Assembly: GCF_023055435.1 (NCBI RefSeq)
Contig: NW_025964334.1
Coordinates: 24,676,001-24,740,000, forward strand
Source: Haliotis rufescens
Lineage: Eukaryota
DNA length: 64,000 nt
Direction of reading: 5' to 3'
Under the pieces are notes generated by a model. It was not told the DNA's origin. It did no database searches and saw only the letters and a list, made by a program, of their open reading frames with translations. The translations under genes were made by a program, and so were the position numbers. This document shows positions 11,757 through 59,515 of this stretch, piece after piece (position 1 is the first letter of the stretch; every line of letters starts with the position of its first letter).

Positions 11757-12014
11757 TTAGTTAAAGCAGGTTGTTACAGCGATGACAAAAAGTGCCACCA
11801 AGTACCCTGCTTTCAGACACACCCCGGAGCTCCCGAGCATGTTCATCAAGTTGAAGATGTTGTTGTCATCGCCGTCGCTGCCCTTAGTGGCGTTATCAGC
11901 TGTTTGCGCTGATGCAAAGACATCAACAGCAGCTGTAGCTTCGGTGGGTTCGACTTTGTCATCTTTTGCAGCATCTGGAACCGGACAAACATGCACGGTG
12001 AAACCATGCTAATC

Positions 12015-12074
<60 letters not shown>

Positions 12075-12300
12075 GGAGAGAGAGGAGAAGGAAAGAAGTG
12101 AGAAAGTGAGTGAGAGAGAAAAGGAGGGAAAGAGAAAGAGGAGAAAGTGTATGTGTGTGTGTGAGAGAGAGAGAGAAAGTGAGGAGAGAGAGTGAGAGAG
12201 AGAAAGAATGTGAGGAGGGAGAGGGAGAAGGAGAGAAGTGAGAAAGAAAGTGAGTGAGAGAGAGAGTGATGGAGGGAGGGAGGGAGAAAGAGAGGAGAAA

Positions 12301-12352
<52 letters not shown>

Positions 12353-15300
12353 TTGAGAGAGAAGGAATTTGGATTCCTCGTCAGCACACCGCCGTGTTTA
12401 ATTTCTTTTTGCTGGTTACCACAAGGATCACATGGCTTCCATCATAATAGTTTGTGTGAAATAACCAGACAGAAAGAACCTTGACCACATGTTGGCAATC
12501 TCCTATAACAGTGTAACTAAACTTCATGTTGACTGAAATTGGACTGTTTGACACGAAACAGTTTGTTTATCACAAGTTCCACGTGAACCCAGTACACAGA
12601 GCTAACTGAAATATAGTAATTACCCGCGGTAGATGAATTCGACTTGTCTGCAGTTGCTGTATTCGTTTCAGTACCGGAACCGGAACCGGAACCACCCAAC
12701 CAGCTCGAGCCTCCCCCACCGGACATGGTCGAGCCCTCTGAAATAGTAAACAAGGTGTTGAATACTAGTAGTATACAGTGAGTGAGTGAGTGAGTGAGTA
12801 AGTAGGGTTTAACGCCGCTTTTAACAGTATTCCGGTTATATCCCGGCATGTCAGCTTAATGTGGGAGGAAAGCCCGAAGTGATGCAGGTCTCAAACGTTT
12901 ACCGCTTCGGTGAAACCCACGAGCACGGGTATGGTGCTGACAAACCTAGAAACATAATCGGGGCGAACCGGGATTCGAACCCACAATCATAGGTTTCTGG
13001 CTTGCCCAAGGGACGCAACTCTGCACAGCAAATTGCGGCGCCTTAGACGACTGGGCCACCCGTGCCCCCAGTAGTATACAGAACGTTGTACATGGATGTA
13101 TACAAATGTAAGCCATTCGTGTCTGATACTTAAGCGGAACATGTTCATGTGCACGGCGGACAAGTCATACATATGTATACTGGTCATAAAACTTAAACCA
13201 CGACCCCTGTTGATAATTACTGTGGCATTTTGTACCCCTTGTGTCTATTTTGCATTCTTCCGGGGTTTGGGGCGGTCGGGTAGCCTAGTGGTTAAAGCCT
13301 TCGCTCGTCACGCAGAAGACCCGGGTTCAATTCCCGACATGGGTACAATGTGTGAAGCCCATTTCTGGTGTCCCCCGCCGTGATATTGCTGGAATATTGC
13401 TAAAAGCGGCGTAAAACCATACTCACTCACTCACTCACTCACTCTTCCGGGGTTTTGGAAAGGGGGAATGATTGATCCTAAGGGGGATTGATTATGTCAT
13501 GAAGGGAGTGTTTTGATCCTGACAGGGAATTGATAATTTCACTTCAGAGTGTGTCAGTTCTAGAATCAGGTCTTTATAGAATGTTTCTAGCTAAGAACAG
13601 AATCACTTAAGTGAGTGAGTGAGTGAGTGAGTATGGTTTTACGCCGCTTTTAGCAATATTCCAGCAATATCGCGGCGGGGGACACCAGAAATGGGCTTCA
13701 CACAGAATCACTTAAGAGTGAAGTTTAAGGGGGTGATTTAATCCTGTCAAACAATAGTGGGATTGGTGACCGCGCCTTCAAATTGAGCCCTGCTATGTTT
13801 TATGGTCCGGCCCTGCCCTACCATGAAATGCAGGTTATAGAAAAGAATGTGGCGTCTACATCGACAAAATGACATTCGCCCAACATTGTCGCACCTTAAA
13901 AACCTATGCAGTATTGGTGGGAATACACTTGAAATGCCCACTGTTGCGTTGACCGAGATAATGTTATCATGATGATGTTCCGAATTAATTTCATTGCTTG
14001 GATAATTTTGTTAGTGAAGACATCGGAGATTAAGACTTGGCTTAAGAGTGTGTTTATGAACTATGAACTTTCGTTAACTGTTTACTTGGCTGTTAACAAA
14101 CAAATAACTGTTTACTTGGCTGTTAACAAACAAAGTCACCTGTTCTCGGTTTTGGAGTTGTTGTAGTTGTGGTGGTGGTAGTAGTAGTAGGAGTGGTGGT
14201 AGTGGTAGTAGTAGTAGGAGTGGTGGTGGTAGTAGTAGTAGTAGCAGTGGTGGTAGTAGTAGCAACAGTGGTGGTAGTAGTAGTAGCAGTGGTGGTAGTA
14301 GCAGTTGTAGAAGTAGTAGTCGTAATGCCAAAGCCATCACACTCGCTACGAGCTACAGAAGAGAGTTATATGTTTCCATTGAATATGACACCAAAATAAA
14401 TCAATCGCAGATGAGGGCTTCAATACATCAACAGGATTTTTTTTCGAATCTCACTTTCACTAAACCTGCCAATTTCATTCTTACTCACTCCCCGTTGTAT
14501 ATAAATATAAATATCGTTTAAATATTTCAGCATATCAAGGCGTGGAAGATAGCCACATCGGAACACATGAGCACTAATATGGTGTTGACCCACCAAGGGT
14601 CATAATCAGGGCAAAACCTTGTATTCGAACCCACCACGCGCTGTTTTGAAAAACTATTTCTGAAATTTCCTATAATGGAAAACATAGTTAAGTTTCCCAA
14701 CATAAGATATAATCATTTTTCTGTAATTAGATTGTTATTGTTTGTTGTTTAACGCCGCACTCAGCAGTATTCCAGCTATATGACGGCGGTCTGTAAATAA
14801 TCGAGTCTGGGCCAGACAATCCAGTGATTGACATCACGAGCATCGATCCACGCAAATGGGATACGATGACAACAACCAAGTCAGCGAGCCTGACCACCCG
14901 ATCCCGTTAGTCGCATCTTATGACAAGCATAGTCGGCATTTACGGAAAGCATGGGTTGCTGAAGACCTATTCTACCCCGGATCTTCACGGGTCAGCATGA
15001 TCAGTCACTGTACGTGTATCAGTCTGAGCACGTGGACCGTTAGTAAAGATCAACCCAGCAGTGACCCACCCACAAGTGGTCCACACAGCAGTGACCCACC
15101 CACAAGTGACCCACCCAGCAGTGACCCATCCACAAGTGGTCCACCCAGCAGTGACCCATCCACAAGTGGTCCACCCAGCAGTGACCCATCCACAAGTGAC
15201 CCACCCAGCAGTGACCCACCCACAAGTGGTCCACCCAGCAGTGACCCATCCACAAGTGGTCCACCCAGCAGTGACCCACCCACAAGTGACCCACCCAGCA

Positions 15301-18300
15301 GTGACCCACCCACAAGTGGTCCACCCAGCAGTGACCCACCCACAAGTGGTCCACCCAGCAGTGACCCATCCACAAGTTGTCCACCCAGCAGTGACCCACC
15401 CACAAGTGGTCCACCCAGCAGTGACCCATCCACAAGTTGTCCACCCAGCAGTGACCCACCCACAAGTGACCCACCCAGCAGTGACCCACCCACAAGTGGT
15501 CCACCCAGCAGTGACCACCCCCAAGTGACCCACCTAGCAGTGACCCACCCACAAGTGGTCCACCCAGCAGTAACCCACCCAGCATTTCTGTAATTAGAGT
15601 CTTCTCGTTTGTCATATGTTCACCTACACAAAACAGTCAAGCATTGACTGTCACAGTTTGCAATCTTCTTATTCATTGCTATGTCGAATTCTGCATAGTG
15701 GTCAACTTGACAGACAACGGACGTCTCTCTGTAGCATCGATTGTAGGACTCCCAGTCTCTGAAAATAGCCAAAGCACGTAACAGTTAAAACCTGTTGGTC
15801 TTTATCTTACCTGTAGATTCCTCTGTGTGCGTGCGTGCGTGCGTGCGTGCGTGCGTGTGTGCAGGAGACCAAGTCGTCTAAGGCGCCGCATTTCGCTATG
15901 CAGAGTTGCGTCCCTTAGGTACCCCAGACACCTATGATTGTGGGTTGGAAACCGGTTCGCCCCGAATATGTTTCCAGGTTCGTCAGCACCTTACCCGTGC
16001 TCGTGGGTTTCACGAGGTGGATACACTCCTGACACCTGCATCAATTCGGGCTTTCCTCCAACATTTATACAACATGATACAACTGGAATACTGGTCAAAC
16101 TCACTCACTCACTCACTCACTCACTCACTCACTCACTCACTCACTCACTCACTCACTCACTCACTCACTCACTGAATGTCTGCATTTATCACTGGAAGAA
16201 CAATATACCTTTACGCAATCAGATGTTTACATATTTGTAAATAAAGACTTTACAAGCATAAACAATTGTCGCATGTATGATGGTTACAAGCATTAACAAT
16301 TGCTGTAAATATGATACACACAAGCATAAACAAGTACCACATATATGATATTTACTAGCATAAACAATTGTCGCATGTATGATGGTTACAAGCATTAACA
16401 ATTGCTGTAAATATGATACACACAAGCATAAACAAGTACCACATATATGATATTTACTAGCATAAACAATTGTCGCATGTATGATGGTTACAAGCATAAA
16501 CAATTGCTGTAAATATGATACACACAAGCATTAACAAGTACCACATATATGATATTTACTAGCATAAACAATTGTCGCATGTATGATGGTTACAAGCATA
16601 AAAAATTGCTGTAAATATGATACACACAAGCATAAACAAGAACCACATATATGATATTTACTAGCATAAACAATTGTCGCATGTATGATGGTTACAAGCA
16701 TAAACAATTGCTGTAAATATGATACACACAAGCATAAACAAGTACCACATATATGATATTTACTAGCATTAACAATTGTGTGTAAATATGATACTTACCT
16801 GGCTTAAAACTTGTTGTAAATCAGAAGATAAATATTAATTTTCATTCTTGAGGTAGGTTACCTGCATCTTTAACCGTGCTAAATTGAATTGGGAACAGAT
16901 CTAACTTAGAAAAACGCGAACTCTTTGGTGTAAGCAAATGTATTGAGTGAATCGGCACGGGTAGAGAGTCCAGGGTTTTGAGTAGGCTGTCGATCAGAAT
17001 TTACGGAATCACCTACAACAGCCTTTAAACTGAATATGGTGCTCTGTATGCTCAAGCAATGTGTTGCTACACATCCTTTGAACATTGTAGTAACCGCAAC
17101 TTTGCACTTTGTAGCCAATAATTGTACACATAATTATCTAAACATGCCTACCCACAATGACTATAAAAGAAGTACTATTCTAAAAATATAAGCTTCCGCG
17201 GTAAATGTATTCTTGTTTGTCTAATCATAAATGTCATCGATTGTGTCGTTATACCCTCAGGAAAGGGGCGGTCGGGTAGCCTAGTGGTTAAAGCGTTGGC
17301 TCGTCACGCCAAAGACCCGGGTTCGATTCCCGACATGGGTACAATGTGTGAAGCCCATTTCTGGTGTCCCCCGCCGTGATATTGCTGGAATATTTCTAAA
17401 AGCGGCGTAAAACCATACTCACTCACTCACTATACCCTTAGGTTGATCGCCGCATTCCTCTTGTGATGGTATCACCTGTCATCGGTAAATAAATTATGGA
17501 GCGAAAGCCTGACAGTGTTAGTCTGGACAATATTGAGTGAGTGAGTGAGGAAATTCATCCAGTATTTTACAAGCAGGCAACTGCTTCAGCACGAGACTGC
17601 ATCCGTGGTGTAGTGGACAGAGCGCCCGTCCAGAGAGCGAAAGGTTGTTCGATCCCCGGCCGCATCAAAACAAAACATGTAAAAAGATGTACTTATTACC
17701 TTACTACCGTTCGGCTTTAAGGGGTTTAAAGAACAACTGGTCGTCTCGGAGACAGTATGCTGTGTCAGAGTTGAGTATCCATGTTAGGCGCGGTCAGGTG
17801 AAATGGGGTTTACTGAACTTATATAGCGACGTGCTGCTTACACGTGTGTGTATGATTGTGCTTGCCCACCGAGATACTTTGCTGCAGTTTAACATGAATA
17901 CACAGTGCACTGACTCCGAGCCGACCAGTGCTTGTTTTATCCCCTTAATGCCGAGCGCCAGGCAGAGTAACAACAAGTACCGTCTTTTAACGTCTTCTGG
18001 TATGACGCGGCCGGGGACCAAACCCCGGACCTCCCGCCTGGCGGGTGGACGCTCTACCACTAGACCGGGTATCCATGTTAAACTGTGACAGGGTATCTCA
18101 GTGGGATANNNNNNNNNNNNNNNNNNNNNNNNNNNNNNNNNNNNNNNNNNNNNNNNNNNNNNNNNNNNNNNNNNNNNNNNNNNNNNNNNNNNNNNNNNNN
18201 NNNNNNNNNNNNNNNNNNNNNNNNNNNNNNNNNNNNNNNNNNNNNNNNNNNNNNNNNNNNNNNNNNNNNNNNNNNNNNNNNNNNNNNNNNNNNNNNNNNN

Positions 18301-19426
18301 NNNNNATTGACGACACAGCAGGTTTAGCCTTAAAGTGAACGGCAATAAAGTTAGCACGTCAATGAACTGACACACATTTTGGATGTACTAGTAACTCTGA
18401 CGTACTCGCAAGGCATGATGGGGTTGGGTCCTGTGAACGAGGCCGGTTTACAGGCGATCACATCTGGACAGAGCGACTTGATGTAGTCGTTCGCCTCTCT
18501 GACGCCGTCGCCCCTTCGCGCAGTGGCCACTGTCAATAAAAATTCCAGTTAATGAAAACATATTAAGCGTATAAAAAAACACAAAAAACTATAAACTCTT
18601 TATTCGATCTTAATGTAAAAGTAATCATAGACTATAAACGTTGATACGATGAGTAAGTAAGTAAAAAGACAAATCCATATATTGAAACGTTACGTCTTTG
18701 AAATATGAAACTTCAAAAGTCCACATTAATTTATCATCACAGCTATTGTTGGGCGTCATGGTCAAGTTTACAGTTTTAAAACGTATCTAACGAGCGAAGG
18801 CGAATCGATGCATAGCTTGTCTAATCGTAAGATCGAAGTGGCGCACTAGTACATTACAGCACGGTCATGGTTGACGCTATCCGGCTTAGTGCTTGCTATT
18901 GCTGAGTGCGATAAGAGAAACATATTTCCCCCGACACATGAAATATCCTACAAAATCAACTTTAACAAAAAATAAACTTAAAAACTACCGAACCGCTGCT
19001 GAAAGCGAAAAATACACGCTGCTCAAGTAACAAAAATGGCCCTTTGCGAAACGAACAGTCCGATTGAGTGAAGTGAGAAATTTACAGTTTATGACGAAAC
19101 ATTTTCAAGAGAATAACAAACAGCATGAAGCGATATTAACTCCATAAATGACTATCTGTCACTAGAGTGCCTTGTCGGTGTGGAAATAACTTCAAAAGGA
19201 AGTCAACAGTTTGTGTACGGGTCAGACACTCTTGTATGACAATAGTTCCGTCAAAGTGTTGTGTTAACTGCAGTGAAACATCAATTGTTATGTTCACTGC
19301 AATGAAAATATCCCTTTTCTCAACTTTGGAAAAATCAATCTTTCACACTTAAGTATATAATAGAGTCTGGTACTCACAGTGCACAATGCAGAGAAGCGTG
19401 GTTACTGTGAAGGTCGTCATGATCAT
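11757..19426 (-). CDS. Gene A: spliced, 282-aa predicted GPI-anchored protein (signal peptide, 8-Cys domain, Thr-rich mucin stalk, Gly/Ser linker, GPI signal). Exons 19426-19378, 18529-18406, 15758-15628, 14352-14140, 12737-12624, 11974-11757
   Basis: Six segments with GT..AG borders and compatible phases (1,2,1,1,1) join into one 849-nt stop-free frame: MIMTTFTVTTLLCIVHLATARRGDGVREANDYIKSLCPDVIACKPASFTGPNPIMPCEDWESYNRCYRETSVVCQVDHYAEFDIAMNKKIANCDSQCLTVLSRSECDGFGI-(~55 aa Thr-rich)-PKPRTEGSTMSGGGGSSWLGGSGSGSG...DGDDNNIFNLMNMLGSSGVCLKAGYLVALFVIAVTTCFN*. The N- and C-termini are hydrophobic, and Cys spacing and phases match gene C. An N gap lies in intron 2. Confidence 0.85.
12017..12362. repeat. 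(GA)n / purine-rich compound microsatellite in the last intron of gene A
   Basis: Direct reading. Confidence 0.95.
12779..13069 (-). mobile_element. SINE family B
   Basis: Full length; TSD AGTAGTATACAG. Confidence 0.9.
13269..13443 (+). mobile_element. SINE family A (tRNA-Asp-like head, ~170 bp, (CACT)n tail)
   Basis: TAGCCTAGTGG A box; CGCTCGTCACGC..AAGACCCGGGTTCAATTCCC resembles tRNA-Asp(GTC); TSD TCTTCCGGGGTTT. Confidence 0.9.
13612..13702 (-). mobile_element. SINE family A, 5'-truncated
   Basis: 3' half only; TSD ACAGAATCACTTAAG. Confidence 0.85.
14742..14992 (-). mobile_element. Family D short retroelement
   Basis: Full length, duplicated-hairpin variant. Confidence 0.85.
15052..15583. 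repeat. 30-bp (2x15) minisatellite, ~17 copies, intron 3 of gene A
   Basis: Unit CCACCCAGCAGTGACCCACCCACAAGTGGT. Confidence 0.95.
15866..16173 (+). mobile_element. SINE family B (diverged) with an expanded (TCAC)n tail
   Basis: Similarity to other family B copies. Confidence 0.8.
16250..16792. repeat. 102-bp tandem repeat (three ~34-bp subunits), ~5 copies
   Basis: Subunits begin AGCAT(A/T)AACAA; 102-nt periodicity. Confidence 0.92.
17265..17430 (+). mobile_element. SINE family A
   Basis: Full length; imperfect TSD TATACCCT(C/T)AGG. Confidence 0.9.
17595..18066. mobile_element. Two family C SINEs in inverted orientation (+ ~17595-17790, - ~17796-18066)
   Basis: Each arm matches the family C consensus on opposite strands. 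Confidence 0.75.
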
Positions 19427-25550: not shown

Positions 25551-27680
25551 CCATGACAGGTTCAGGTGGGGATCACAATCACCCTGACAGGTTCAGGTGG
25601 GGATCACAGTTACCATGGCAGGTTCAGGTGGGGATCACAGTTACCATGACAGGTTCAGGTGGGGATCACAATTACCATGACAGGTTCAGGTGGGGATCAC
25701 AGTTAACATGACAGGTTCAGGTGGGGATCACAGTAAACGTGACAGGTTCAGGTGGAGATCAAAATTACCATGACAGGTTCAGGTGGGGATCACAATTACC
25801 ATGACAGGTTCAGGTGGGGATCACAGTTAACATGACAGGTTCAGGTGGGGATCACAGTAAACATGACAGGTTCAGGTGAAGATCCAAATTACCATGACAG
25901 GTTCAGGTGGGGATCACAATTACCATGACAGGTTCCGGATGGAGATCACAGTTACCATGAGAGGTTCAGGTGGGGATCACAATTACCATGACAGGTTTAG
26001 GTGGGGATCACTGTAACCATGACAGGTTCCCGATGGGGATCACACTTGCCATGACAGGTTCAGGTGGGGATCATAGTTACCATGACAGGTTCAAGTGGGG
26101 ATCACAGTTACCATGACAGGTTCAGGTGGGGATCAAAGTTACCATGACAGGTTCAGATGGGGCTCACAGTTACCATGACAGGTTCAGGTGGGGATCACAG
26201 TTACCATGACAGGTTCAGGTGGGGATCACAGTTACCATGACAGGTTCAGGTGGGGATCACAGTTACCATGACAGGTTCAGGTGGGGATCACAGTTACCAT
26301 GACAGGTTCAGGTGGGGATCACAGTTACCATGACAGGTTCAGGTGGGGATCACAGTTACCATGACGGGTTCATGTGGGGATCACAGTTACCATGACAGGT
26401 TCAGGTGGGGATCACAATTACCATGACAGGTTCAGGTGGGGATCACAGTTAACATGACAGGTTCAGGTGGAATCACAATTACCATGACAGGTTCAGGTGG
26501 GGATCACAATTACCATGACAGGTTCAGGTGGGAATCACAGTTACCATGACAGGTTAAGGATCGGGATCATAGTTACCATGACAGGTTCAGGTGGGGATCA
26601 CAACTACCATGACAGGTTCAGGTTGGGATCACAATTACCATGACAGATTCAGGTGGGGATCGCAATTACCATGACAGGTTCAGGTGGGGATCACAATTAA
26701 CATGACAGGTTCAGGTGGGGATCACAATTACCATGACAGGTTCAGGTTTGGATCACAATTACCATGACAGGTTCAGGTGGGGATCACAATTACCATGACA
26801 GGTTCCGGTGGGGATCACAATTACCATGACAGGTTCAGGTTGGGATCACAATTACCATGACAGGTTCAGGTGGGGATCGCAATTACCATGACAGGTTCAT
26901 GTGGGAATCACAGTTACCATGACAGGTTCAGGTGGGGATCACAGTTACCATGACAGGTTTAGTAGGAGATCACAGTTACCATGACAGGTTCAGGTGGGGA
27001 TCACAATTACCATGACAGGTTCAGGTGGGGATCACAGTTAACATGACAGGTTCAGGTGGAGATCACAATTACCATGACAGGTTCAGGTGGGGATCACAAT
27101 TACCATGACAGGTTCAGGTGGGGATCACAGTTACCATGACAGGTTCAGGTGGGGATCACAGTTACCATGACAGGTTCAGGTGGGGATCACATTACCATGA
27201 CAGGTTCAGGTGGGGATCACAGTTACCATGACAGGTTCAGGTGGGGATCACATTACCATGACAGGTTCAGGTGGAGATCACAGTTACCATGACAGGTTCA
27301 GGTGGGGATCACAGTTACCATGACAGGTTCAGGTGGGGATCACGGTTACCATGACAGGTTCAGGTGGGGATCACAGTTACCATGACAGGTTCAGGTGGGG
27401 ATCACAATTACCATGACAGGTTCAGGTGGGGATCACAGTTACCATGACGGGTTCATGTGGGGATCATAGTTACCATGACAGGTTCAGGTGGGGATCACAG
27501 TTACCATGACAGGTTCAGGTGGGGATCACTGTAACCATGACAGGTTCAGGTGGGGATCACAGTTACCATGACAGGTTCAGGTGGGGATCACAGTTACCAT
27601 GACAGGTTCAGGTGGGGATCACAATTACCATGACAGGTTCAGGTGGGGATCACAATCACCCTGACAGGTTCAGGTGAATA
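25551..27680. repeat. 31-bp minisatellite, ~68 copies
   Basis: Unit CCATGACAGGTTCAGGTGGGGATCACAGTTA. Confidence 0.97.
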
Positions 27681-32200: not shown

Positions 32201-33039
32201 AATTAAAACCTTGTAGAAGTATTCTTTGAGTGCAGACTAAGCATCAGTACCGTTCATTTTTGGGATATGATATCGCTGACTTAGGAGATTTTAAATTGTA
32301 AATCAAACATATGATAAAATCAACTGAGAGGTATAGTTTGCTTCGTTCATGAAATCAAAATCTACTATCAATTTCAGTGATTAAAAACCTAGTAAGTAAG
32401 GTTTTTTCAGTTTATATAAGATTAATCTAGTTTGGGTTACAAAGTCCAGGTTTAAGTTCATAAAGGTAATAGTTAGCATGTGTGTGTCGAGTATTGCCGT
32501 TTGTCTTTCAAACAGGCTAAGACTTAACGATGTCTTGTCATTGCACGGTGAAGCAAAGAGTCTTAATCGTAAAGATCTGTGTTAGCCGTCAGTGTATATC
32601 TATCACGGCATGGGTTAACGCCAGCACGATCCTCTGTACATCTAAGACCGGATATACTGTCATGGATAATTAGACAACCTTGTCGTCCAACACTGGTTGA
32701 ATCCCAAATGCCATACTGTTAGAATCCCAATGCCATACTGGCGGAATCCAAATGCCATACTGGCAGAATCCCAATGCCATACTGGCATTTCCCGGAGTAT
32801 TTCACTCTAGTATAGTTCACTGTGGCGGTCAAATAAGGGGTCCCAGTTGTCTGTGTTGTCCATGATAGAGCCAGGGTGAGGTCACCAAGGGTTGTGACAA
32901 GTTCTGGGTGGCATCGCTAATGACCATGGCAGAGTTGGAACGTCAAGGACAATGAAAGTCAGTGTTAAGTCAAGCACAATGACCGATTCGGGTTGGATCT
33001 CAAAAGACTATGAATTAGGCCACTAAGGACCGTGAAAGA

Positions 33040-37605: not shown

Positions 37606-38879
37606 CTGTGAACAGAGTGGAGTGTTCAAAGAGGTTTTTCATTAGTTTGGACGGGTAGAATTCATTATGATCATATATATATTATTTTGTCCGTACAAAC
37701 GACACATTTGAAAGTGATTTCTCTTGCCATTCATCTCAAACATGCAGAGAACATTTCTATTTGAAGCATCAGCGACAAAAACTATGTCTGATGCAATTCG
37801 CTTCTTTGACTGTTAAGGTTTAACCACTTGACTTGCCTTTGCTTGTATTTGTGAAGGGTACCACCGGTGGCGCAGGATACGCTCACAGTTTTACACTTTG
37901 TGTTATTACTGTTTACTTTAAAGCATCCACATAAAATGTTCACGTCTGGCTTAAAGCTGAGTTTTTTCAATCAAGATTTCACCGTAAAAGGTTAGGTCAT
38001 CTCAGGATGTTTTGTAGATATTCAGAAGAATTTACAAATTATGACACGTTGCTTGTCAACATCATCTTTGTGTTCTTGTAATTGAACCAGGATTTCAAAA
38101 GCTATTCTGGACGTGCATTTTATCAAGTAACACTGAACCAAATATAGGTCATTATGCAAAATTATAGATGTATCTGTTAATTTAGGAAATAGAATCAACA
38201 TTTTTTCCTGATTTCTGTGTTACAGATTTCATATCTTACTCACCGGCACTTTCTGGTTTATAGAAAATTTGTGAGTGGTAGGTGCTACCGGTAGCATTAT
38301 GTTTACCCTTTTCAGTGAACACCTGGTGTCATTACTGATTTTCAGTGATCCGTTCATATTATTTTCATCACTAATTTGCTTTTTATAATTTTACACTTTA
38401 TCAATATGTATGGAATATGTTTCGGCAGATAGCCAAGACTAATAATCATCTGGCCAATGAATGTATTACTACATAAACCATTGTTAACGGAATGGAAAAT
38501 GACGTCACAGCTAATCATTGTTGACGTCATATAATATCATAATTGATGACATCAGATTAGCTGATCGGTGCACTCCCATTTGCAGTGATAGATAAAGAAC
38601 GGGGTAAAATAAAATGAGCTTATCTATAGAATAATTTTCTTGAATATTAACTTGCCTCTTGATTGTATGTTATCAGCATTTGACACAACGATTGCCGAGT
38701 TTAATGAATGGTTCGGAAATTTAAGAATTTGAAAAGACAAACAGCAGCTGGTTTTAGTGACACAACTTTCGGAGTATTTGGAAGAGAACCACTGCATATA
38801 AACATGTATAAATGCATTATCATTTTCTGGCTTGAAGCAAATATGAAATCCGAAAATTAACAAACATTTCATACCAGTC

Positions 38880-46783: not shown

Positions 46784-47848
46784 ATGAGAAAGATGTTCAG
46801 TCGACTTTTGAACATTCTGATCGGCGCTGCTCTTTTCGGGCAGATCGGCGCTTTATGGTTCGGTAAGTTGATTTTACTGTAGAAATGTACGTAAAAGTTA
46901 AATTGGTGTTCCAGAATAATTTTACTGAAGGAGGGGTGATTTGTTTGTTTGTTTGTTTAACGCAGCACCCAGCAATATGCCATCTTTGTGACGGTTGTCT
47001 GTAAATAATCAATTATGGGCCAGACAATCCAGTGATTGACACATAATCATCGATCTACACAACTGGTATACGATGACATGCATCAGCGAGCCTGACCACC
47101 CGATCCCGATAGTCGCCTCTTACGACAAGCATGGATTACTGAAGTCCAATTCTAACCCGGACTCTTCACGGGTCGTACGAGGCATGGGCGAGGTATGAAA
47201 TCCACGATAGCCTTGGAAACAAGACGTTCTCATTAGATTATTGTTTTCCCATTTTACATGTCAAAAAGCATTGTGTTTGCTTGGTTTCGTCATTTTCTTT
47301 TTTTTTGATATATTGACAATCACCAGAAACAGATTGTGCATATGCGCATGACGACTGGATTTCATTTCAATTTTCCTACTCGCCTCTCGGGGCAATTTTC
47401 CTAATGCCTACTATAGACCTTTAAGGTGTCAATATTATGTATCTATTTTGAAATTCTACATGTTTGAGACAGTGTAGTGAGTCGCCCTAAATCTGGTTTT
47501 CGTTCGTCTTTGGAATTTTCACCACTTAACTCACCATCGTTGAATGGTCCAGACCTCATAGGTGATGGTGAAAAGGAGTGTTCCTTACGGTGTCATCGTT
47601 GCATCAGGGGCGATGTTGTTGCCTTGTGGATAAAGTGTTCGTTCGTCACGCCAAAGACCCAGGTTCGATTCCCCACATGGGTACAATGAGTGAAGCCCAT
47701 TTCTGTAATCCCCTGCCTTGATATTGCTGGAATAATCCTGAAACTATACACATTTACTTTTTGCAAAGACACTTGGCGTTCGTATAATCACCCCAACTCG
47801 ATGTCATTTTAACTTACATTTGTGCTGTGGAGATTTAAGCTGGTATAC

Positions 47849-47888
<40 letters not shown>

Positions 47889-50800
47889 GACGTCGAGTTT
47901 GTTCTTGTCTTCATGTTCATAGTCTTCATCATCATGTCATTATTTTAAATGAATGAATAGCTCCTCCAGACCCGGATGAAATTGATGTTCGGTGTCCCAC
48001 GTTCCGCAGCTGCAACACAGATTATTTCAAAGATCACAGAGAGGATCCAAATAAGCTTGTGGCATGCGCGTAAGTAGCACTTTCAGAAATAGTGTGGGAG
48101 TGAGTGATTTAAAATTTATTGCCGCTTTCTACAGTATTCCTGTTACATCCCGGTGTGTCTACTTAACGTGGAAGGAAAGTTCGAAGTGATGCAGGTCTCA
48201 GAGATTTACCACCTTTGTGAAACCCTAGAGAACGGGTATGGTTCTGACAAACCCAGAAACATCATCGGGACGACCAATGATCATAGGTTCCTTACGTGCC
48301 CAAGGGACGCAACTCTGCACATCGAATTGAGAAAACTTGGCCACCAGTGCACCCACTTTCAGAAATAAGTTTAAAATCGACCATCCTTTTTTGGGGCATG
48401 GCATTATGCGCGTCTGCTTGTGTACAGTTAATCATCGTTTACTCAAAGTCCTAATCACTATCGTTAGTACAGGTTAAAAATGATATTTTAGTTTAATACT
48501 TGTTGCACACGTAATGAGACATGTAAATAATATGTAAAGTAAGATAATTATGATAGGTGTTAATGTTATTTTTCTCATCACATTGGAGGATTTATACAGA
48601 TCAAAAAAGCTGTATCCGCCCATGTTATGTATCTAGTCTGGTTTTCGTTCGTCTTTGGAATTTTCATAACTTATCTCGCCATTATTGAACGGTTCAGACC
48701 TCATAGGTGATTGTGAAAAGGAGTCTTCCTTACTGTGTCATCGTTGTATCAGGGGCGATGGTGTTGCCTTGTGGTTAAAGTGTTCGTTCGTCACGCTAAA
48801 GACCCAGGGTCGATTCCCCACAATGGTACAATGTTTGAAGATCATGTTTTATCCTAAAAGCTGCATTAATATAGATACGTAGGTTTGTGTGCGTGCGTGT
48901 GGTGAGGTGAGGTGAAATGGGGTTTAACGTCGCGTCCAAGATTAGTGCACTTATATAGCGACGTGCATGCACTTGTGTGTGTTTGTGTGGCTGCTTGTAC
49001 TAGTCCGGACTGATGCCGATTTATAGTGCTAGCTCACTGAGATACCATGCTGCAGTTTAACATGAATACCCCACTCAGACACAGTATACTGACTCCGAGC
49101 CGACCAGTCCTTGTTTTAGCCCCTTAATGCCGAGCGCCAGACAGGGTAACAACAAGTACCATCTTTTAACGTCTTTGGTATGACGCGGTCGGGGATCGAA
49201 CCCCGGACCTTCCGGCGGACGGTCTAAAACTAGACCACGGAGGCGGTCGTGTGTGCGTGTGTGNNNNNNNNNNNNNNNNNNNNNNNNNNNNNNNNNNNNN
49301 NNNNNNNNNNNNNNNNNNNNNNNNNNNNNNNNNNNNNNNNNNNNNNNNNNNNNNNNNNNNNNNNNNNNNNNNNNNNNNNNNNNNNNNNNNNNNNNNNNNN
49401 NNNNNNNNNNNNNNNNNNNNNNNNNNNNNNNNNNNNNNNNNNNNNNNNNNNNNNNNNNNNNNNNNNNNNNNATAAAACGTCAACGCGAGAGAATAACCAG
49501 TCTCGATTATCTGCCGAAACAGACTCCATTTGGCGTAAAAGGCACTACAGTAGTGAAAATAGTCTAACATTTAGTCTCTGTAATCTTATATTACACAATA
49601 TCCTTCTTGACTCTAAAAATATATTTAAAAAATTCCCTATGCTGATTTCTAGCTTGAGCTGGCTAGACTTGCTTTTGTATGTGTTTCTGGATTATTTTTT
49701 TCATAAAATAAATTTATTCCAAGGTCATGGTGTAGGACTATAGTGAAAATTATAGGAAAGTATCTCAAATCGGTGGTGACACCAGGTGTTCGCGAAAAGG
49801 GTAAGCATGCACCCGCCACTCAAAGAAGTTTGCTGTCTGCATTTGTTGCCTGACGCGACACAGCAGAACTCCTGCCATGCGATGGCGATCTGTAAACAAA
49901 CCAGACAATCAAGTGATCGATGGACCAAAACATCTACTGACACGATAGCGCATTTTTTTTACGAAAAGCAAAAACAAATAAACACGTCGAAGATGTAGTA
50001 AATAGTGAACTTTAGGCTTTAAATATACGTTCCAAGTATCTCAATCTCATTAAATTCAGAAGCCCGTGAAGAATCCGGGGCAGAATAGGTCTTCAGCAAC
50101 CTATGCTTACCGTAAAAGCGACAATGCTTGTCGTAAGAGGCGACTAACGATATCGGGTGGTCAGGCTCGCTGACTCAGTTGATGCATGTCAACATATCCC
50201 TTTTGCGTAGATCGTAGACAATTGCGTCACTGGATTGTCTGGTCCATCGATTATTTACAGACCGCCGTCATATAGCAGGAATATTGCTGAGCGCGGCGAT
50301 AAACAACGAATGCCATCTTCGAACCGTTAAGGACGATGGAGCATCCATTAATCAAACCCTGTTTATGTGTTTTCAGTTATGATGAATTTCTTACCACCTG
50401 CTGTTTTCTCTAGGGCACAAGAGACACATATGTCATGTGTTTACAACCAAGGGGTAATATGCGATCTATTCGACTTTGAGGACTATCTGCGCCGGTACGA
50501 AAACAAGCAAGAGAAGTGTTTTGCCCATTGCGTGGATGGTACGTACTGATTGCCCCAGTCACTGTTCACTCACTTCTAAGAATAAGAGGAAGAAGTTAGA
50601 TTATTTATTACAAATCTTTACACTTCCATGTCTCAGGGTGGTGTGTGTGTGTGTGTGTGTTTGTGTGTGTGTGTGGGGGGGGGGGGGGGGCACGGGTGGC
50701 CCAGTCGTCTAAGGCGCCGCGAATCGCGGAGTGCAGAGTTGCGTCCCTTGGGCATGCCAGAAAACTATGATTGTGGGTTCGAATCCCGGTTCTCCCCGAT

Positions 50801-52891
50801 TATGTTTCTAGGTTTGTCAGCACCATACCCGTGCTCGTGGGTTTCACCGAAGTGGTAAACGTCCGAGACCTGCACCACTTCGGGCTTTCCTCCCACATTA
50901 AGCTGACACGCCGCGATATAACTGGGATACTGTTAAAAGCGGCGTTAAACCAAACTCACTCACTCGCTCCATGTCTCAGAGTTCGAAAATTATATTCCAG
51001 ACCACGTATTGCCTTAAAGTGAGTGAGTAAGTATGGTTTTACGCCACTTTACGAACACTTTAAGATATACGAGTAAACGTATACAAGGAAACGTATAATC
51101 GTAATAGTTTGAAAACATATTCAACGGCCACGACAGTGTCTGCAGTGGTGTGGCTATAGTACTGTGTTGTGAGTGAGTGTGTAAGGTTTTACGTCACTTT
51201 TAGCAATATTCCGGTATTACCACGACAGGGGACACCAGAAATGGGGTTCACACATTGTACCCCATCTTCCTGAGGTAAGGGAGTTAACTGACTGTAAAAG
51301 TCCAGTTTCCACCCTTGCTTAACAAAGCTGAAAATTCTGAGCTCGATCGTAGCGCCACCAGTGGCTATTACGATTTATGTCCCTTCTATGTCCCTCCTGT
51401 TGACCAATCAGATTCCATCTCTGATATCACTTATCACTTCTTCAAACAAAATGGCGGCGCCCAGTGAAGGCGGTCTGAGCGATAACCAAAATCTATATTG
51501 TAGTAAAACGGGTCTTACTTCGCGAAGTGCTTCATATCACGTGAAATGTCTGTGGACGCTTAGTTGACGGTACAAATGCGTTGCAAATCCTGCAATCGAC
51601 CGAAGTCTGCACGGCAGTTTACGAACCGGATGTCGATTTTGTTACGCGAGTTTGATTGGGCTATACAAAAACTCGTTAGTCGAGACAACATATAGCTCCA
51701 TAATTCCAGCCTAGTTCGGCAAGGGTGGCAAATTGACTTTTATAGTAAGTTAACTTTCTTGGTTCGGGAAGATGATTGTACCCAGGTAGGTCTCAACCGA
51801 AAACATTATTTATCACAAACCTGTAGACGTTGTTACAAGGTGATTTCCGATTTGAAACGCGAAGGTCCGCCCAGAACTAAATTGTTGAATTAGCAAATAA
51901 CCCCCACACAAGATCAACGAATAATAAATTATATTGAAACTCACAGGGCGAGATTTACAATCACATGAGTCAATACAATGGTTCAAATGTGTGGAAGCAT
52001 TATTCAATGCTGATGCCATATTTACATATGGTTCCCAGGACGACATGTGACACTATCGAATGCCTTGAAAGTGGCACGTTATCCGTTTTTGAATTCGGTA
52101 AACAGTGTTGGAAGCTGGAAATGTTTTCAGTTTGGTATCCAATCCGCACTGGACAAGTAGATGAGACGCAAGTGGGGTCGTAGAATGCCACGAATTGTCT
52201 TTATAGGTACAGACAGAATTCTAGTGACTGTCGAAACTATTCGGATGATGTAGGCCATTGTATCAACTAAGGGAGGAAACTCTAATGTACAAAGGTGCAT
52301 AACTCTCAGGAACTCAGATCACTCAGATCACTACCAAAGATTGGTATTTTATTTTATTTTCTGCGGCAAATATAGATATAATTCAAGACGTCAACGCCAG
52401 AGAACAATCTCGACTATCTGCGGAAACAGAATCCAAAGACAAACTGGTGGTGAAATCATAGCTTGATATGATTGTCTATGGTATTTTCTTTAACTGCCAT
52501 TGATTGGTTTACTATAGGTTATTCCGAGATATGTGGTAGGGAGCCGAAACTTACCACAACAACCACCACCACAACTACCACCACTACTACAACCACTATA
52601 ACCACTACCACCACTACCACCACTACCACCACCCCTACAGCTACTGGAGACATCGTGGGTGGATCTGACAGCATCACTCAGACGGAGCCAGACAACACTG
52701 GGTCGCCTGGAGCTGGTGATGCGCTGAGGGGAGACAACTCTACTTTGTCGGACAACAGTCAGGATGAGGATGGGGATTCGGGCTTCAACCTAATGGATTT
52801 GTTTGACAACAACGGGAGTGACAGCATGGCGGCGTCTCTGGTAGTCACGATGTTTCTTCTTGTTTCACATCTCGTCCCAACCATTATGTAA
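46784..52891 (+). CDS. Gene C: spliced, 228-aa predicted GPI-anchored paralog of gene A. Exons 46784-46862, 47961-48069, 50414-50538, 52518-52891
   Basis: Donors gtaagt, gtaagt, gtacgt; phases 1,2,1. Translation MRKMFSRLLNILIGAALFGQIGALWFAPPDPDEIDVRCPTFRSCNTDYFKDHREDPNKLVACAAQETHMSCVYNQGVICDLFDFEDYLRRYENKQEKCFAHCVDGYSEICGREPKL-(poly-Thr)-...EDGDSGFNLMDLFDNNGSDSMAASLVVTMFLLVSHLVPTIM*. Exon 3 has the same C-x7-C-x18-C-x3-C spacing as gene A. Exon 2 could alternatively start in frame at 47970. Confidence 0.85.
46940..47174 (-). mobile_element. Family D short retroelement, intron 1 of gene C
   Basis: Similarity to the reference copy. Confidence 0.82.
48098..48355 (-). mobile_element. SINE family B (diverged)
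   Basis: Similarity to family B; flanked by CACTTTCAGAAATA repeats. Confidence 0.75.
48901..49247 (-). mobile_element. SINE family C
   Basis: Near full-length reverse-complement match. Confidence 0.9.
49472..49850 (+). repeat. Unclassified dispersed repeat family E (pieces also at 38270-38455 minus, 52385-52450 and 58025-58520)
   Basis: Shared blocks CGTCAACGC.AGAGAA..A.C.GTCTCGA.TATCTGC.GAAACAGA and GACACCAGGTGTTC...GAAAAGGGTAA.CAT. Confidence 0.6.
50064..50308 (+). mobile_element. Family D short retroelement
   Basis: Full length, duplicated hairpin. Confidence 0.85.
50686..50967 (+). mobile_element. SINE family B
   Basis: Full length; TSD TCCATGTCTCAG at 50625-50636 and 50968-50979. Confidence 0.9.
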
Positions 52892-56386: not shown

Positions 56387-56554
56387 TGGTCTTCAGCAAC
56401 CCATGCTTGACGTAATTGGCGACTAATGGGATCAGATGGTCAGGCTCGCAGACTTGGTTGATGCAAGTCATCGTATTCCAATTGCGCAAAGCGATGCTCA
56501 TGATGTCAGTCACTGGATTGTCTAGTCCAGATGCGATTATTTACAGACCGCCGT

Positions 56555-57243
56555 TATGTGAAGATCGGTTCGGGGGCGGCAGCGTTATGGTATGGGGTGG
56601 GATTACAGCAATACAGAGGACCCGTTTGGTAGTGGTAGAGGGAAATCTCAATGGACAGTGTTACTGCGACGAGATCATCGGCCCTGTTGTTCTACCGTTT
56701 TTGCGTCGTCATGGCCCAGGCATTACCTTTCAACATGACAACGCCCGGCCTCATATTGCTCGACTTGTTCAGGATTCTCTTCAACAAAACAACGAGAATG
56801 TCATCCCCTGGCCGGCCCGCTCCCCTGATCTCTCACCAATCGAGCACATGTGGGGTGAGAAGCATCGGCGCCTTCGACGTCAACTACGTATTCCACAGAC
56901 ACTCCAGGAACTTCGAAACATGCTCCAGCAGATATGGACAGATATCCCACAGGACATTGTGCGACGCCTGGTCCATTCCATGAGACGAAGATGTGTTGCT
57001 TGCATCGCAACCATAGGTGGACACACGCTATTGATTTGTAAAATGACATTTTGGCATGTTCATGGTTTGTTTTATTTTATGAAATCACGCATTTTCTGAA
57101 GTCATTATGGCAAATTAGACCAGTTAAACACTTACAGGGGTCTTTTATCTGATGCAAACCGAAATTGTTTCCGATTTGGTAAAAAAGATAACTTTGCATT
57201 AAATCTTATTCAATGTCACAGGTACTTTTGTTGTTCAGTATAT
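56555..57243 (+). mobile_element. Tc1-like (DD34E) transposon, 3' half only
   Basis: FGGGSVMVWGGI, FQHDNARPH, WPARSPDLSPIEHMW and GGHT motifs; no DNA-binding domain or first catalytic Asp; probable right end ...TTCAGTATA near 57243. Confidence 0.88.
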
Positions 57244-57871
57244 ATCGCACATGGCAAACACTATTTAAAAACATGCCATACACGTCATACACATGTCATA
57301 CACATGTCAAACCAATGACAAAAGCATGTCACACATGTTATACACGCTACACGTCACATAAATTTGTCCTACCATTAGGTTTCTTGGTTGTTCTTGAAAA
57401 CCTGTTTTGGAGTCTATATTCTTCATTGTTGTTTATCAAGATCCCTGAATTTGCAAAATACGCTTACGTTAGAAATTGGTTTTTAATGGAACCTGATATT
57501 TCATTTACATTTACATTAAATCACGGTCGGAAAATATGCTTAGAAAAAACGACCGTTACTTCACAGTGACCCCTTCACAAAATTGTCACCACTATTTGGC
57601 TTTTTACGCCCAATGGAATTTGTTTCGACAGATCGTTGATATTCTCGGGCGTTGACCTTATAAATTCAACATTAACAGGTTTTTGTTCAATTTTGAAACA
57701 TTCTCTGTACTAACAAACAACAACACGCACCAGAATGTTTTGTTCATGTTGCAAATGACTTTTATTTTTGAATAGAAGTTGGTTTCATGACACAAAATAT
57801 AAGCAGGAATAGTAACGTGGGAATTACTGGGTTCAGCATTAATGTTTTCCATCACGCTGTTCAGGATCACC

Positions 57872-57878
57872 TATAAGA
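57872..57878 (+). promoter_or_regulatory. Candidate TATA box of gene D
   Basis: TATAAGA ~45 nt upstream of the exon-1 ATG. Confidence 0.35.
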
Positions 57879-57922
57879 TTCCAGAAGCGGTTTGCTAGTT
57901 CACATGTGATGGTTCCAGCGAT

Positions 57923-59515
57923 ATGACTACCTCGCAGTATCTTCATTCCCTTTGCTTATTTTGGATCGGAATAGGTGAGTAATGCAATTAATAACCATGT
58001 CAGAATAACCTGCCATACACTGAAATATAAACCGTCAACGCCAGAGAATAATCAGTCTCAACTGTTACGGTCAAAATAACCTCTCTAAAATAATTCCTAT
58101 TTATTTTTCCAAATTATTAAAGTTTAAATTTTTCTTAAATTTTCATTCAAAATTTAGCATGTAGAAGATTATTATTGTATGCATGCTTCAGGAGTTTAGC
58201 CTGTTTAGGCTGCATGCCATGTATGCTTTTTAGTTTCTCGAAGGAGAGAATGAGGACCCATGTGGTCAGTGACAAAAAAGCAAAAAGTAAAGGTTAGAGA
58301 AGAATATGGGTCTACCAAAATGGTATGTTGTCATGCATTTGTATTTCTTTTCCATTGTCAATATATTTCTGTATATATCTGCCGAGACAGATTCCATTGG
58401 GCGTAAAGGGCAAAATAGTCGTAAAAGTTATATGAAAGTATCATTGAAAATCTGTCATGACATTGTTTGCGAAAAAGGAAGCATGCCTGCTCTACCGGAA
58501 GAACCCGCCACTCACAATTTGCATATAAATGTAAGCGTTTACATTTGTTACCTAACCTCGCACAGAAGTACTCCTGCCATACGATGGCGGCCTGTAGAAC
58601 GATCGACTTTTGACCAGACAATCCATGGATGGACCAGCCAATCCAGTTATCCGATAGCATGTTTACAGATTTTGTTGTAGCTAAAACGATCTGGTAATTT
58701 TTTGTAACGTCTACTGCGTATAAGTTCAGATATTCTGATGCTTACAAGTAAAGAAAAACAATTAGGAAATTTAACCTGTGTTTTCTGAAGACGTAAGAAC
58801 TCTCGCGATGCAAGCTGCCGAACACAGTGCCACCCACCCACTCTCCGCAACCGTAACTTGTACAATGGGCGCGGTATACAGGACCACGGGCCATGATAAA
58901 GTCAGTCAGTGCAAAACAAATTTGTCAAAAGATGTCCAGATCTTTTTGAAGAATTTATGGTGTCCCTGAGCGGATGCCATTATATGACCTTTCAAATCAC
59001 TTGGTTTATTGGGTCAATGGTAGAAATATATACAAAAATAAAACGATTCCCATAACGTGTTTAGTTATGTTTTTAGGAATAATTGTTTGATGGCAGTTAA
59101 AAAGAACAATTTACTCTCCTCATGGGGGGGGGGGGGGGGGGGGGCGGCGGCGTGTGTGGCGCAGGGGTTCAGAAATAATTAGGCTCATAGTCTTATCTTG
59201 CAGCTATAGCTGATTAAATATTTAGTCTCAACCTCTCCATCAACCACCAAGAATATCATAAGTTCAGTGCCTTACTGACAATATTTCAAAGTCTGCCTGT
59301 GGTGTAACCAGTATCTATGTTTCAGTGCTAGTACTGCCGTGTCGTGGGCAACATCGTGGTTCCTGGAGGTCTAAACCAACAGCGGCATCACGATGGGGGA
59401 CTGTGGGTGTTCGCCAAACTAAAACATTCAGCCAACCACCCAGCCCTTATTGTGATCATTACCAGAACTGTCTGACGACTCACACCACCCACAGAAGGAC
59501 GGGTCAACGGTGCAG
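57923..59515 (+). CDS. Gene D (5' part only): third paralog of the 8-Cys family. Exons 57923-57974 and 59326-59515; the rest is presumed beyond the window end
   Basis: Exon 1 MTTSQYLHSLCLFWIGI ends G|gtgagt (phase 1). Exon 2 follows tatgtttcag and reads VLVLPCRGQHRGSWRSKPTAASRWGTVGVRQTKTFSQPPSPYCDHYQNCLTTHTTHRRTGQRC, ending AG|gtatag (phase 2). It has the same C-x5-C...C-x| exon-2 pattern as genes A and C. TATAAGA lies at 57872-57878. Confidence 0.72.

What the first reader, a model, noticed from the sequence alone, without database searches (positions are those of the whole stretch)
11757..59515. Hidden cluster of a divergent GPI-anchored 8-Cys plus mucin-stalk gene family (genes A, C, D)
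Seen: three spliced genes, not recovered by the ORF track, share a signal-peptide exon (phase 1) and an exon 2 with C-x5-C-x13/17-C ending in phase 2. Genes A and C continue with an exon 3 of exactly C-x7-C-x18-C-x3-C ending in phase 1, then a last Cys, a poly-Thr stalk and a GPI-type tail. Outside the cysteines, identity is very low. Inference: an old or fast-evolving, locally expanded family displaying a small variable disulfide-bonded head on a glycosylated stalk, as expected for recognition molecules (neural, immune, gamete or mantle surface). I do not recognise it as a named family.
Basis: partly seen in the sequence, partly recalled or inferred. Interest (0 to 1): 0.85.

Follow-up and report, generated by a model that had tools for sequence, protein, structure and literature searches.

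The report
Unannotated abalone cysteine-head, stalk, GPI genes
Three neighbouring, apparently unannotated red-abalone genes encode small surface proteins, each a four-disulfide helical head on a long spacer with a lipid-anchor signal; sequence analysis supports them, but no RNA or functional data could be obtained.

Summary
Genes A (minus strand, 11757-19426) and C (plus strand, 46784-52891) have canonical splice sites and identical intron phases (1, 2, 1). Both show C-x5-C-x13/17-C-x8-C-x7-C-x18-C-x3-C plus a last Cys, a poly-Thr stalk and a GPI-type tail. The three N gaps lie in introns or between genes.

Gene D is also real. Its missing exons lie just beyond the window: exon 3 (C-x7-C-x19-C-x3-C, same phases) and a 491-codon last exon with a GPI-type tail. 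D's stalk is not mucin. It is about 330 residues of Lys/Glu-rich 41-residue repeats, predicted as a long alpha-helix.

The exon-3 pattern with its splice phases occurs 3 times in 264 kb and 0 times in 40 simulations. A whole-genome profile search finds only these three copies.

No match was found in Pfam, PDB sequences or two very large protein collections, so the genes appear unannotated. The head's six-Cys core has the spacing of abalone's own RGM N-terminal domain, and of neuritin as I recall it. Statistical support for that link is only suggestive.

No RNA evidence could be obtained and function is inferred. Earlier scan notes concern this same window only, not other DNA.

The parts
19378..19426 (-). 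Gene A, candidate exon 1 (start codon plus short hydrophobic signal peptide, phase-1 donor GTGAGT)
   Evidence: Scan for ATG, hydrophobic core and phase-1 GT donor. It joins exon 2 in frame. Not verified by RNA.
18406..18529 (-). Gene A exon 2: C-x5-C-x13-C, enters in phase 1, leaves in phase 2
18109..18305 (.). Assembly gap inside intron 2 of gene A
   Evidence: It starts 100 bases beyond the exon 2 donor and touches no exon.
15628..15758 (-). Gene A exon 3: C-x7-C-x18-C-x3-C, phase 2 in, phase 1 out
   Evidence: AlphaFold2 on this exon alone gives helix-loop-helix, pLDDT 79.
14140..14352 (-). Gene A exon 4: eighth Cys, then a Thr-rich (Thr/Ala/Pro) stalk of about 60 residues; phase 1 out
   Evidence: Thr codons are mixed: ACT 28, ACC 15, ACA 5, ACG 1.
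11757..11974 (-). Gene A exon 5: acidic segment, FNLM motif, small-residue site (GSSG), hydrophobic C-terminus, TAA stop at 11759-11757
46784..46862 (+). Gene C, candidate exon 1 (signal peptide, donor GTAAGT, phase 1)
47961..48069 (+). Gene C exon 2: C-x5-C-x17-C, phase 1 in, phase 2 out
49264..49471 (.). Assembly gap inside intron 2 of gene C
50414..50538 (+). Gene C exon 3: C-x7-C-x18-C-x3-C, phase 2 in, phase 1 out
52518..52891 (+). Gene C exon 4: eighth Cys, poly-Thr stalk, acidic region, FNLM motif, NNGS site, hydrophobic tail, stop at 52889-52891
58333..58420 (+). Gene D, candidate exon 1 (hydrophobic N-terminus, phase-1 donor GTAAAA); uncertain
59326..59515 (+). Gene D exon 2: C-x5-C-x13-C at 59451-59513, then TGC AG|GTATAG (phase 2). 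The acceptor is at 59326 or 59383. The gene continues beyond the window: exon 3 at L006:1853-1977 (window-equivalent 65853-65977) and exon 4 at L037:3642-5116 (72642-74116).
59596..64000 (.). 55-bp satellite that fills intron 2 of gene D; it runs on to window-equivalent 65756

Best explanation
A, C and D are three functional, anciently diverged paralogous genes. Each encodes a secreted protein that is probably GPI-anchored and built on one plan:
- a signal peptide;
- a head of about 75 residues held by four disulfides;
- a long spacer;
- a short acidic segment;
- a GPI-attachment signal.

At least the second half of the head is alpha-helical. The spacer differs between paralogues. A and C have a poly-threonine stretch that would be heavily O-glycosylated. 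D has about 330 residues of Lys/Glu-rich 41-residue repeats, predicted as a long alpha-helix.

I infer that the proteins hold a small binding head tens of nanometres above the outer leaflet of the cell membrane. There it would act as a ligand or co-receptor, and it could be shed by cleavage of the anchor.

The head belongs to no family that sequence searches recognise. Its six-Cys core has the spacing of the RGM N-terminal domain and of neuritin, and both of those are GPI-anchored. A distant relationship, and a similar ligand-binding role, is possible but not shown.

Shown here: the exon structure, the Cys skeleton, the C-terminal signals, the copy number and the lack of database matches. Inferred: expression, glycosylation, the GPI anchor and the function.
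For: - All splice sites are canonical and the phases (1, 2, 1) are the same in the three genes. The joined models close in frame.
- The exon-3 pattern with its phases occurs 3 times in 264 kb, against 0 in 40 simulations. The exon-2 pattern, apart from two microsatellite artefacts, is found only at A, C and D.
- The three copies share only 16-29% identity. Yet all keep open frames, 8 aligned Cys, the splice sites and the tail. This argues for long purifying selection.
- Each C-terminus has an acidic run, small residues (GSSG, NNGS, NNSGAS), then 14-17 hydrophobic residues ending 0-6 residues before the stop, with no charged cytoplasmic tail.
- In D's repeat region only the Lys/Glu frame is open: 0 stops, against 15 and 24 in the other two frames.
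- AlphaFold2 of D's exon 4 gives helices 24-187 and 200-357 at pLDDT about 85, a disordered acidic part, and a terminal hydrophobic helix.
- AlphaFold2 of A's exon 3 gives helix-loop-helix at pLDDT 79.
- Abalone's own RGM_N domain reads C-x4-C-x20-C-x8-C-x7-C-x21-C. The family reads C-x5-C-x13/17-C-x8-C-x7-C-x18/19-C.
- An HMM of the three heads scores the abalone RGM_N domain at 10.2 bits, aligned in register over the third to fifth Cys. That score is reached by 8 of 5000 full shuffles and by 109 of 5000 shuffles that keep the Cys positions fixed.
Against:
- No protein like A's exon 5, C's exon 4 or D's exon 4 is in the 5.8-billion or 1.84-billion protein collections. The genes are therefore absent from the annotations held there, which could mean very low expression.
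- The exon 1 assignments, and D's exon 2 acceptor, are predictions only.
- The Pfam RGM_N and NRN1 models do not pick up the exons.
- hhalign of exon 3 against RGM_N gives a P-value of only 0.017 and a probability of 2.7%.
- RGM was chosen after its Cys spacing had been seen, so the shuffle statistics are partly circular.
- The GPI signal was judged by eye, not by a trained predictor.
Confidence: 0.6

Rival explanations
1. The genes are real, but the head is a lineage-specific new fold unrelated to RGM or neuritin, and the shared C-x8-C-x7-C spacing is coincidence. Function could be anything typical of fast-evolving surface proteins, such as gamete, immune or shell-epithelium recognition.
For: No Pfam, PDB-sequence or Atlas hit. 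The Pfam RGM_N and NRN1 models miss the exons. Two extra Cys (C-x3-C and a last Cys) are absent from RGM_N. Abalone RGM_N lies in a single exon, whereas this head is split after its third Cys. The best PDB profile hit is an unrelated helix plus CX3C motif, Tim9.
Against: Six Cys fall in the same order as in RGM_N, with identical central spacing. Non-Cys residues add some score: 109 of 5000 Cys-fixed shuffles reach it. Both comparison families are GPI-anchored, as this one appears to be.
Confidence: 0.4
2. The loci are unexpressed relics or chance exon-like patterns, not functional genes.
For: No matching protein in very large collections. No RNA data. The region is full of satellites and carries a transposase fragment. 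The exon-2 pattern alone is not rarer than chance.
Against: The exon-3 pattern with phases occurs 3 times against 0 expected. Three copies below 30% identity all keep intact frames, splice sites, 8 Cys, N-terminal hydrophobic exons and tails. D keeps a 491-codon open frame while the other two frames hold 15 and 24 stops.
Confidence: 0.12
3. The C-terminal hydrophobic segment is a transmembrane anchor, or the proteins are simply secreted, and no GPI is attached.
For: No trained GPI predictor was run. D's terminal segment is predicted as a 23-residue helix.
Against: All three proteins end 0-6 residues after the hydrophobic stretch, with no basic cytoplasmic residues. Each has a cluster of small residues 6-10 positions upstream of it. 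This is the classical GPI signal layout, from general knowledge.
Confidence: 0.2

Closest known systems
RGM (repulsive guidance molecule) N-terminal domain, Pfam PF06535; abalone's own copy is at G000:C1:83852242-83852442
   Same: Both proteins carry a signal peptide and a GPI anchor (for RGM: PMC8063088). Both have a small N-terminal Cys-rich domain. The six Cys are in the same order, with identical C-x8-C-x7-C in the centre, similar outer spacings and an aromatic residue three positions before the fourth Cys. In RGM this domain binds BMP ligands (PMC8063088, citing Healey 2015).
   Different: There is no significant HMM match. The family has two extra Cys. It lacks the von Willebrand D-like domain and the GDPH cleavage site that follow RGM_N in abalone RGM; a stalk follows instead. 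The head is split by a phase-2 intron, whereas abalone RGM_N lies in one exon.
Neuritin / CPG15 (Pfam PF15056 NRN1)
   Same: Neuritin is a small protein with a signal peptide, a single six-Cys domain and a GPI anchor, and it can be shed (PMC10123642). From memory, its spacing is C-x9-C-x24-C-x8-C-x7-C-x27-C. Only the Cys at residue 83 and the peptide 47-61 are anchored by PMC10123642.
   Different: No match to the NRN1 model, either exon by exon or genome-wide. Neuritin has no mucin or helical stalk and no seventh or eighth Cys. To my knowledge it is known only from vertebrates.
Mucin-stalked GPI or membrane glycoproteins with a Cys-rich head, for example fungal Wsc-type sensors (8-Cys WSC head plus Ser/Thr-rich stalk; PMC9024836)
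   Same: The architecture is the same: a disulfide-rich head projected on an O-glycosylated Ser/Thr-rich rod from the membrane.
   Different: The head domain and the kingdom are unrelated. Wsc1 is a transmembrane protein, not GPI-anchored. This is an analogy only.
ER/K-type single alpha-helix spacers (known to me from myosins and other intracellular proteins)
   Same: D's 41-residue Lys/Glu-rich repeats are predicted as helices of about 160 residues each.
   Different: Here the helix would be extracellular, between a Cys-rich head and a GPI signal. No experiment shows that it is a stable single helix and not a coiled coil.

Membership tests
RGM N-terminal domain (PF06535) | Score above the Pfam gathering threshold for RGM_N | tested here: not met
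   Exon-wise hmmscan gave no hit at E up to 10. A genome-wide search with PF06535 finds the true RGM gene at 64.5 bits but none of A, C or D.
RGM N-terminal domain (PF06535) | Six-Cys skeleton C-x4-C-x~20-C-x8-C-x7-C-x~21-C | tested here: inconclusive
   The family has C-x5-C-x13/17-C-x8-C-x7-C-x18/19-C plus two more Cys. The heads HMM against abalone RGM_N scores 10.2 bits; empirical P is 0.0016 with full shuffles and 0.022 with Cys fixed. hhalign P is 0.017.
RGM N-terminal domain (PF06535) | Followed by a von Willebrand D-like domain with a GDPH autocleavage site | tested here: not met
   Abalone RGM has GDPH about 30 residues after the domain. In A, C and D a poly-Thr or Lys/Glu stalk follows directly.
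Neuritin (PF15056) | Score above the Pfam gathering threshold for NRN1 | tested here: not met
   The best genome-wide hits have E above 1 and lie elsewhere.
Neuritin (PF15056) | Small protein made of a signal peptide, one Cys-rich domain and a GPI signal | tested here: inconclusive
   The layout is present, but with a long stalk added. The signal peptide and GPI signal were judged by eye only.
Ly6/uPAR three-finger domain | N-terminal C-x2-C and C-terminal CC-x4-CN motifs, 8-10 Cys (from memory) | tested here: not met
   Neither motif is in the heads, and there is no Pfam hit. Exon 3 is predicted helical, not beta.
GPI-anchored protein | C-terminal signal: small omega-site residues, a polar spacer, then a hydrophobic end with no cytoplasmic tail | tested here: met
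   Read directly from the three C-termini. D's tail is predicted helical. Actual attachment cannot be tested with these tools.
Mucin-type O-glycosylated stalk | Long uninterrupted Thr/Ser/Pro-rich tract in a secreted protein | tested here: met
   A has about 60 residues and C about 27 Thr in 28 residues. D lacks it. Glycosylation itself cannot be tested here.
Small Tim (twin CX3C) proteins | Two CX3C motifs in a helical hairpin, in a mitochondrial protein without a signal peptide | tested here: not met
   There is only one CX3C. The Tim9 match (E 0.0056) covers one helix and one motif. These proteins have secretory signals.

The most novel reading that the evidence does not exclude
The three genes are invertebrate stand-alone relatives of the RGM N-terminal and neuritin helical domain. 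That would make neuritin-type proteins older than vertebrates. It would also define a bilaterian superfamily of GPI-anchored three-helix ligand binders, possibly BMP/TGF-beta co-receptors. In abalone the head would be projected on interchangeable rigid spacers: a mucin rod, or an extracellular ER/K-type helix about 50 nm long.
Probability: 0.25. Interest if true: 0.65.

Novelty: new variant of a known kind. Interest (0 to 1): 0.4.

Why it matters
If expressed, these are abalone surface proteins that the annotations in the protein collections searched here have missed. Their head domain has no family assignment.

The paralogues give a natural experiment in spacer design. The same head and anchor are joined by a glycosylated poly-Thr rod in two genes and by a long charged alpha-helix in the third. 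This argues that distance from the membrane is what selection keeps.

If the head is related to the RGM N-domain and neuritin, it bears on the origin of neuritin and on BMP co-receptor evolution in lophotrochozoans. Without expression or binding data it remains an orphan gene family, of which molluscs have many.

Tried and rejected
- Protein databases: C exon 4, A exon 5 against 1.84 billion representatives and the D exon 4 C-terminus all gave nothing.
- A search with abalone RGM_N, meant to collect RGM sequences for a deeper profile, also found nothing. Only one RGM sequence was therefore available.
- Pfam exon by exon: only noise.
- ESM Atlas with A exon 3: no usable hit.
- PDB sequence profiles: exon 3 gave Tim9 at E 0.0056 (one helix plus CX3C, judged an analogy); exon 2 gave ephrin-A at E above 0.6 (noise).
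- Foldseek with the exon-3 model: nothing.
- Complex prediction on the exon-2 and exon-3 halves of the head as two chains: no verdict, score 0.01. This is not evidence either way.
- Own-genome searches with single exons found only the exons themselves. The weak extra hits of the exon-3 profile are repeat-derived.
- Literature searches for an invertebrate neuritin, or for a named abalone family of this build, found nothing relevant.
- Joined spliced proteins have no reference. They were not sent to any search, fold or database tool, and that step was left out. Joined models were built only inside local scripts from the session's files, to check frame and length and to compare with abalone RGM_N.
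- Considered and rejected on Cys pattern or predicted secondary structure: Ly6/uPAR, saposin or swaposin, GFR-alpha, and insect chemosensory or odorant-binding proteins.


Full report
**Setting.** Earlier notes of this scan identify the genome as red abalone. The window is G000:C556:24676001-24740000. It is rich in satellites and has four N runs. I tested the gaps first. Gap 18109-18305 lies in intron 2 of gene A, 49264-49471 in intron 2 of gene C, and 34833-35133 between genes. No exon touches a gap, and the reading frames close across the introns without needing anything from the gaps. Gene D has no N between its exon 2 and exon 3, so the exon-2-then-exon-3 order is also seen on uninterrupted sequence. 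I did not try to fill any gap.

Gene A is on the minus strand:
- Exon 2, 18529-18406: enters in phase 1, has C-x5-C-x13-C, ends TGC GA|GTACGT.
- Exon 3, 15758-15628: C-x7-C-x18-C-x3-C, donor T|GTAGGT, phase 1. The alternative AG|GTGAAC donor runs into a stop in exon 4.
- Exon 4, 14352-14140: an eighth Cys, then about 60 Thr-rich residues.
- Exon 5, 11974-11757: acidic segment, FNLM motif, GSSG, hydrophobic end, TAA stop.

Gene C is on the plus strand:
- Exon 2, 47961-48069: C-x5-C-x17-C.
- Exon 3, 50414-50538: the same C-x7-C-x18-C-x3-C.
- Exon 4, 52518-52891: eighth Cys, poly-Thr, acidic segment, FNLM, NNGS, hydrophobic end, stop.

A scan for ATG, a hydrophobic core and a phase-1 donor gives good first exons at 19426-19378 (A, GTGAGT) and 46784-46862 (C, GTAAGT). 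Assembled locally, the models are in frame, at 244 and 228 residues.

**Observation: gene D.** I first doubted D, because its exon 2 is Arg-rich. Three results changed that:
- A DNA-level pattern for 'C-x5-C-x10..20-C, two bases, GT' hits only A, C and D in 264 kb on both strands, apart from two microsatellite artefacts.
- At 6.3 kb downstream, just past the window end, lies an exon with acceptor TTGCAG, one base, seven codons, C-x7-C-x19-C-x3-C, then G|GTAAGA (L006:1853-1977). Its layout and phases are exactly those of exon 3 in A and C.
- At window-equivalent 72642 (L037:3642) a strong acceptor (TTTTTTATTGACAG) opens a 491-codon last exon in the required phase. It has a Cys at position 6, then about 7.5 copies of a 41-residue Lys/Glu-rich repeat, an acidic region, NNSGAS and a hydrophobic end.

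Only that frame is open: 0 stops, against 15 and 24 in the other two. Introns 2 and 3 of D are filled by 55-bp and 21/63-bp satellites. D's exon 1 (candidate 58333-58420) and its exon 2 acceptor (59326 or 59383) remain uncertain.

**Chance.** The exon-3 pattern with both splice phases occurs 3 times in the 264 kb and 0 times in 40 first-order Markov simulations. The exon-2 pattern alone is not significant (5 observed, 2.9 expected). Its three real copies, however, sit 2.3-6.3 kb upstream of an exon 3 on the same strand, which by my arithmetic has a joint chance of about 1e-5.

**Family size.** Single exons find only themselves in the 1.33-Gb genome. A profile of the three exon 3 sequences finds A, C and D at 80-86 bits; the next hit is 23 bits and lies in a repeat. 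A relaxed scan of 100 kb on each side finds no further copy. The family therefore has three members, all in this cluster.

**Are they functional?** The copies share 16-29% identity. Yet all keep open frames, canonical sites, eight aligned Cys, hydrophobic N-termini and the C-terminal signal. I read this as long-standing purifying selection.

Two points weigh against that reading. No RNA evidence could be obtained. And no protein resembling A exon 5, C exon 4 or D exon 4 exists in the two large collections, even though C's full length (228 residues) lay inside the length limits of its search. The genes are therefore not among the annotated proteins held there.

**Anatomy and likely mechanism.**
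- AlphaFold2 on A's exon 3 alone (three-sequence alignment) gives helix 2-11, a loop, and helix 21-40, at pLDDT 79. The best PDB profile hit is likewise a helix ending in CX3C, Tim9 at E 0.0056, which I take as an analogy.
- D's last exon is predicted as two helices, 24-187 and 200-357, at pLDDT about 85. A disordered acidic part and a terminal hydrophobic helix follow.
- All three C-termini have small residues, a short spacer and 14-17 hydrophobic residues, and they end with no cytoplasmic tail. This is the layout of a GPI signal, from general knowledge.

I conclude, by inference, that these are GPI-anchored proteins that project a small helical four-disulfide head far from the membrane. The spacer is an O-glycosylated poly-Thr rod in A and C, and a charged alpha-helix in D, about 50 nm long if it is a single helix. 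The most likely role is as a surface ligand or co-receptor that can be shed.

**Comparison with known families.** Pfam gives nothing exon by exon. NRN1 gives only noise. RGM_N finds a true abalone RGM gene at 64.5 bits but not A, C or D.

The abalone RGM_N domain reads C-x4-C-x20-C-x8-C-x7-C-x21-C. The family reads C-x5-C-x13/17-C-x8-C-x7-C-x18/19-C, followed by -x3-C-x6..8-C. Further tests gave:
- hhalign of the exon-3 profile against RGM_N aligns the fourth and fifth Cys in register, with a P-value of 0.017.
- A local HMM of the three joined heads scores RGM_N at 10.2 bits, in register over the third to fifth Cys. That score is reached by 8 of 5000 full shuffles and 109 of 5000 shuffles with the Cys positions fixed.

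This is suggestive, not proof, and RGM was chosen after its pattern had been seen. The family also lacks the von Willebrand D-like part and the GDPH site of RGM.

Neuritin's spacing (C-x9-C-x24-C-x8-C-x7-C-x27-C) is from my memory. Only Cys83 and peptide 47-61 are anchored by PMC10123642. RGM's N-domain binds BMP ligands, and RGM is GPI-anchored (PMC8063088).

I therefore do not file the family under RGM or neuritin. I state a working resemblance with about one chance in three of true homology.

The joined spliced proteins have no reference, so they were not sent to any search, fold or database tool. This is why the fold of the whole head could not be predicted or compared. Joined models were handled only in local scripts.

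**Verdict.** This is a new variant of a known kind of surface protein. It is of moderate interest, limited by the absence of expression and functional evidence.

Noticed in passing
L037:3644-5113 (window-equivalent 72644-74113, + strand): Gene D's stalk is a 123-bp coding tandem repeat giving about 7.5 copies of a 41-residue Lys/Glu-rich unit. It is predicted as very long alpha-helices. An ER/K-type helix in a secreted, GPI-signal-bearing protein is unusual.
   Followed up: partly
window 36402-36650 and 37397-37681, minus strand: Gene B, from another note (s1-811198). Its open segments are rich in His, Tyr, Gly and Asn and end in a hydrophobic C-terminus. It has no Pfam match and no Cys head. 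It may be a headless relative or unrelated.
   Followed up: partly
window 56416-57096, + strand: An ORF of 227 residues matches the DDE_3 transposase family (E 3e-08). It is a transposon remnant between genes C and D.
   Followed up: partly
L028:1237-1731 (G000:C1:83852242-83852442, minus strand): Abalone has a bona fide RGM gene. The RGM_N domain (64.5 bits) and the GDPH autocleavage motif lie in one 165-codon open stretch.
   Followed up: partly
window 59596-64000 continuing to L006:1756; L006:3273-8525: Two large satellites fill introns 2 and 3 of gene D: a 55-bp unit of about 110 copies in all, and a 21/63-bp unit spanning about 5.2 kb. The window holds further satellites at 15053-15581, 25551-27676 and 33033-34184.
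   Followed up: no
window 18500-18520, minus strand (gene A exon 2): Gene A has an RGD tripeptide right after the predicted signal-peptide cleavage site (..ATA|RRGDG). It is absent from C and D, so it is probably chance.
   Followed up: no
window 11844-11855 (minus strand) and 52784-52795 (+ strand): The motif FNLM, followed by an acidic or Asn residue, sits just upstream of the GPI-type signal in both A and C. D has a looser version (WDIL). Its role is unknown.
   Followed up: no
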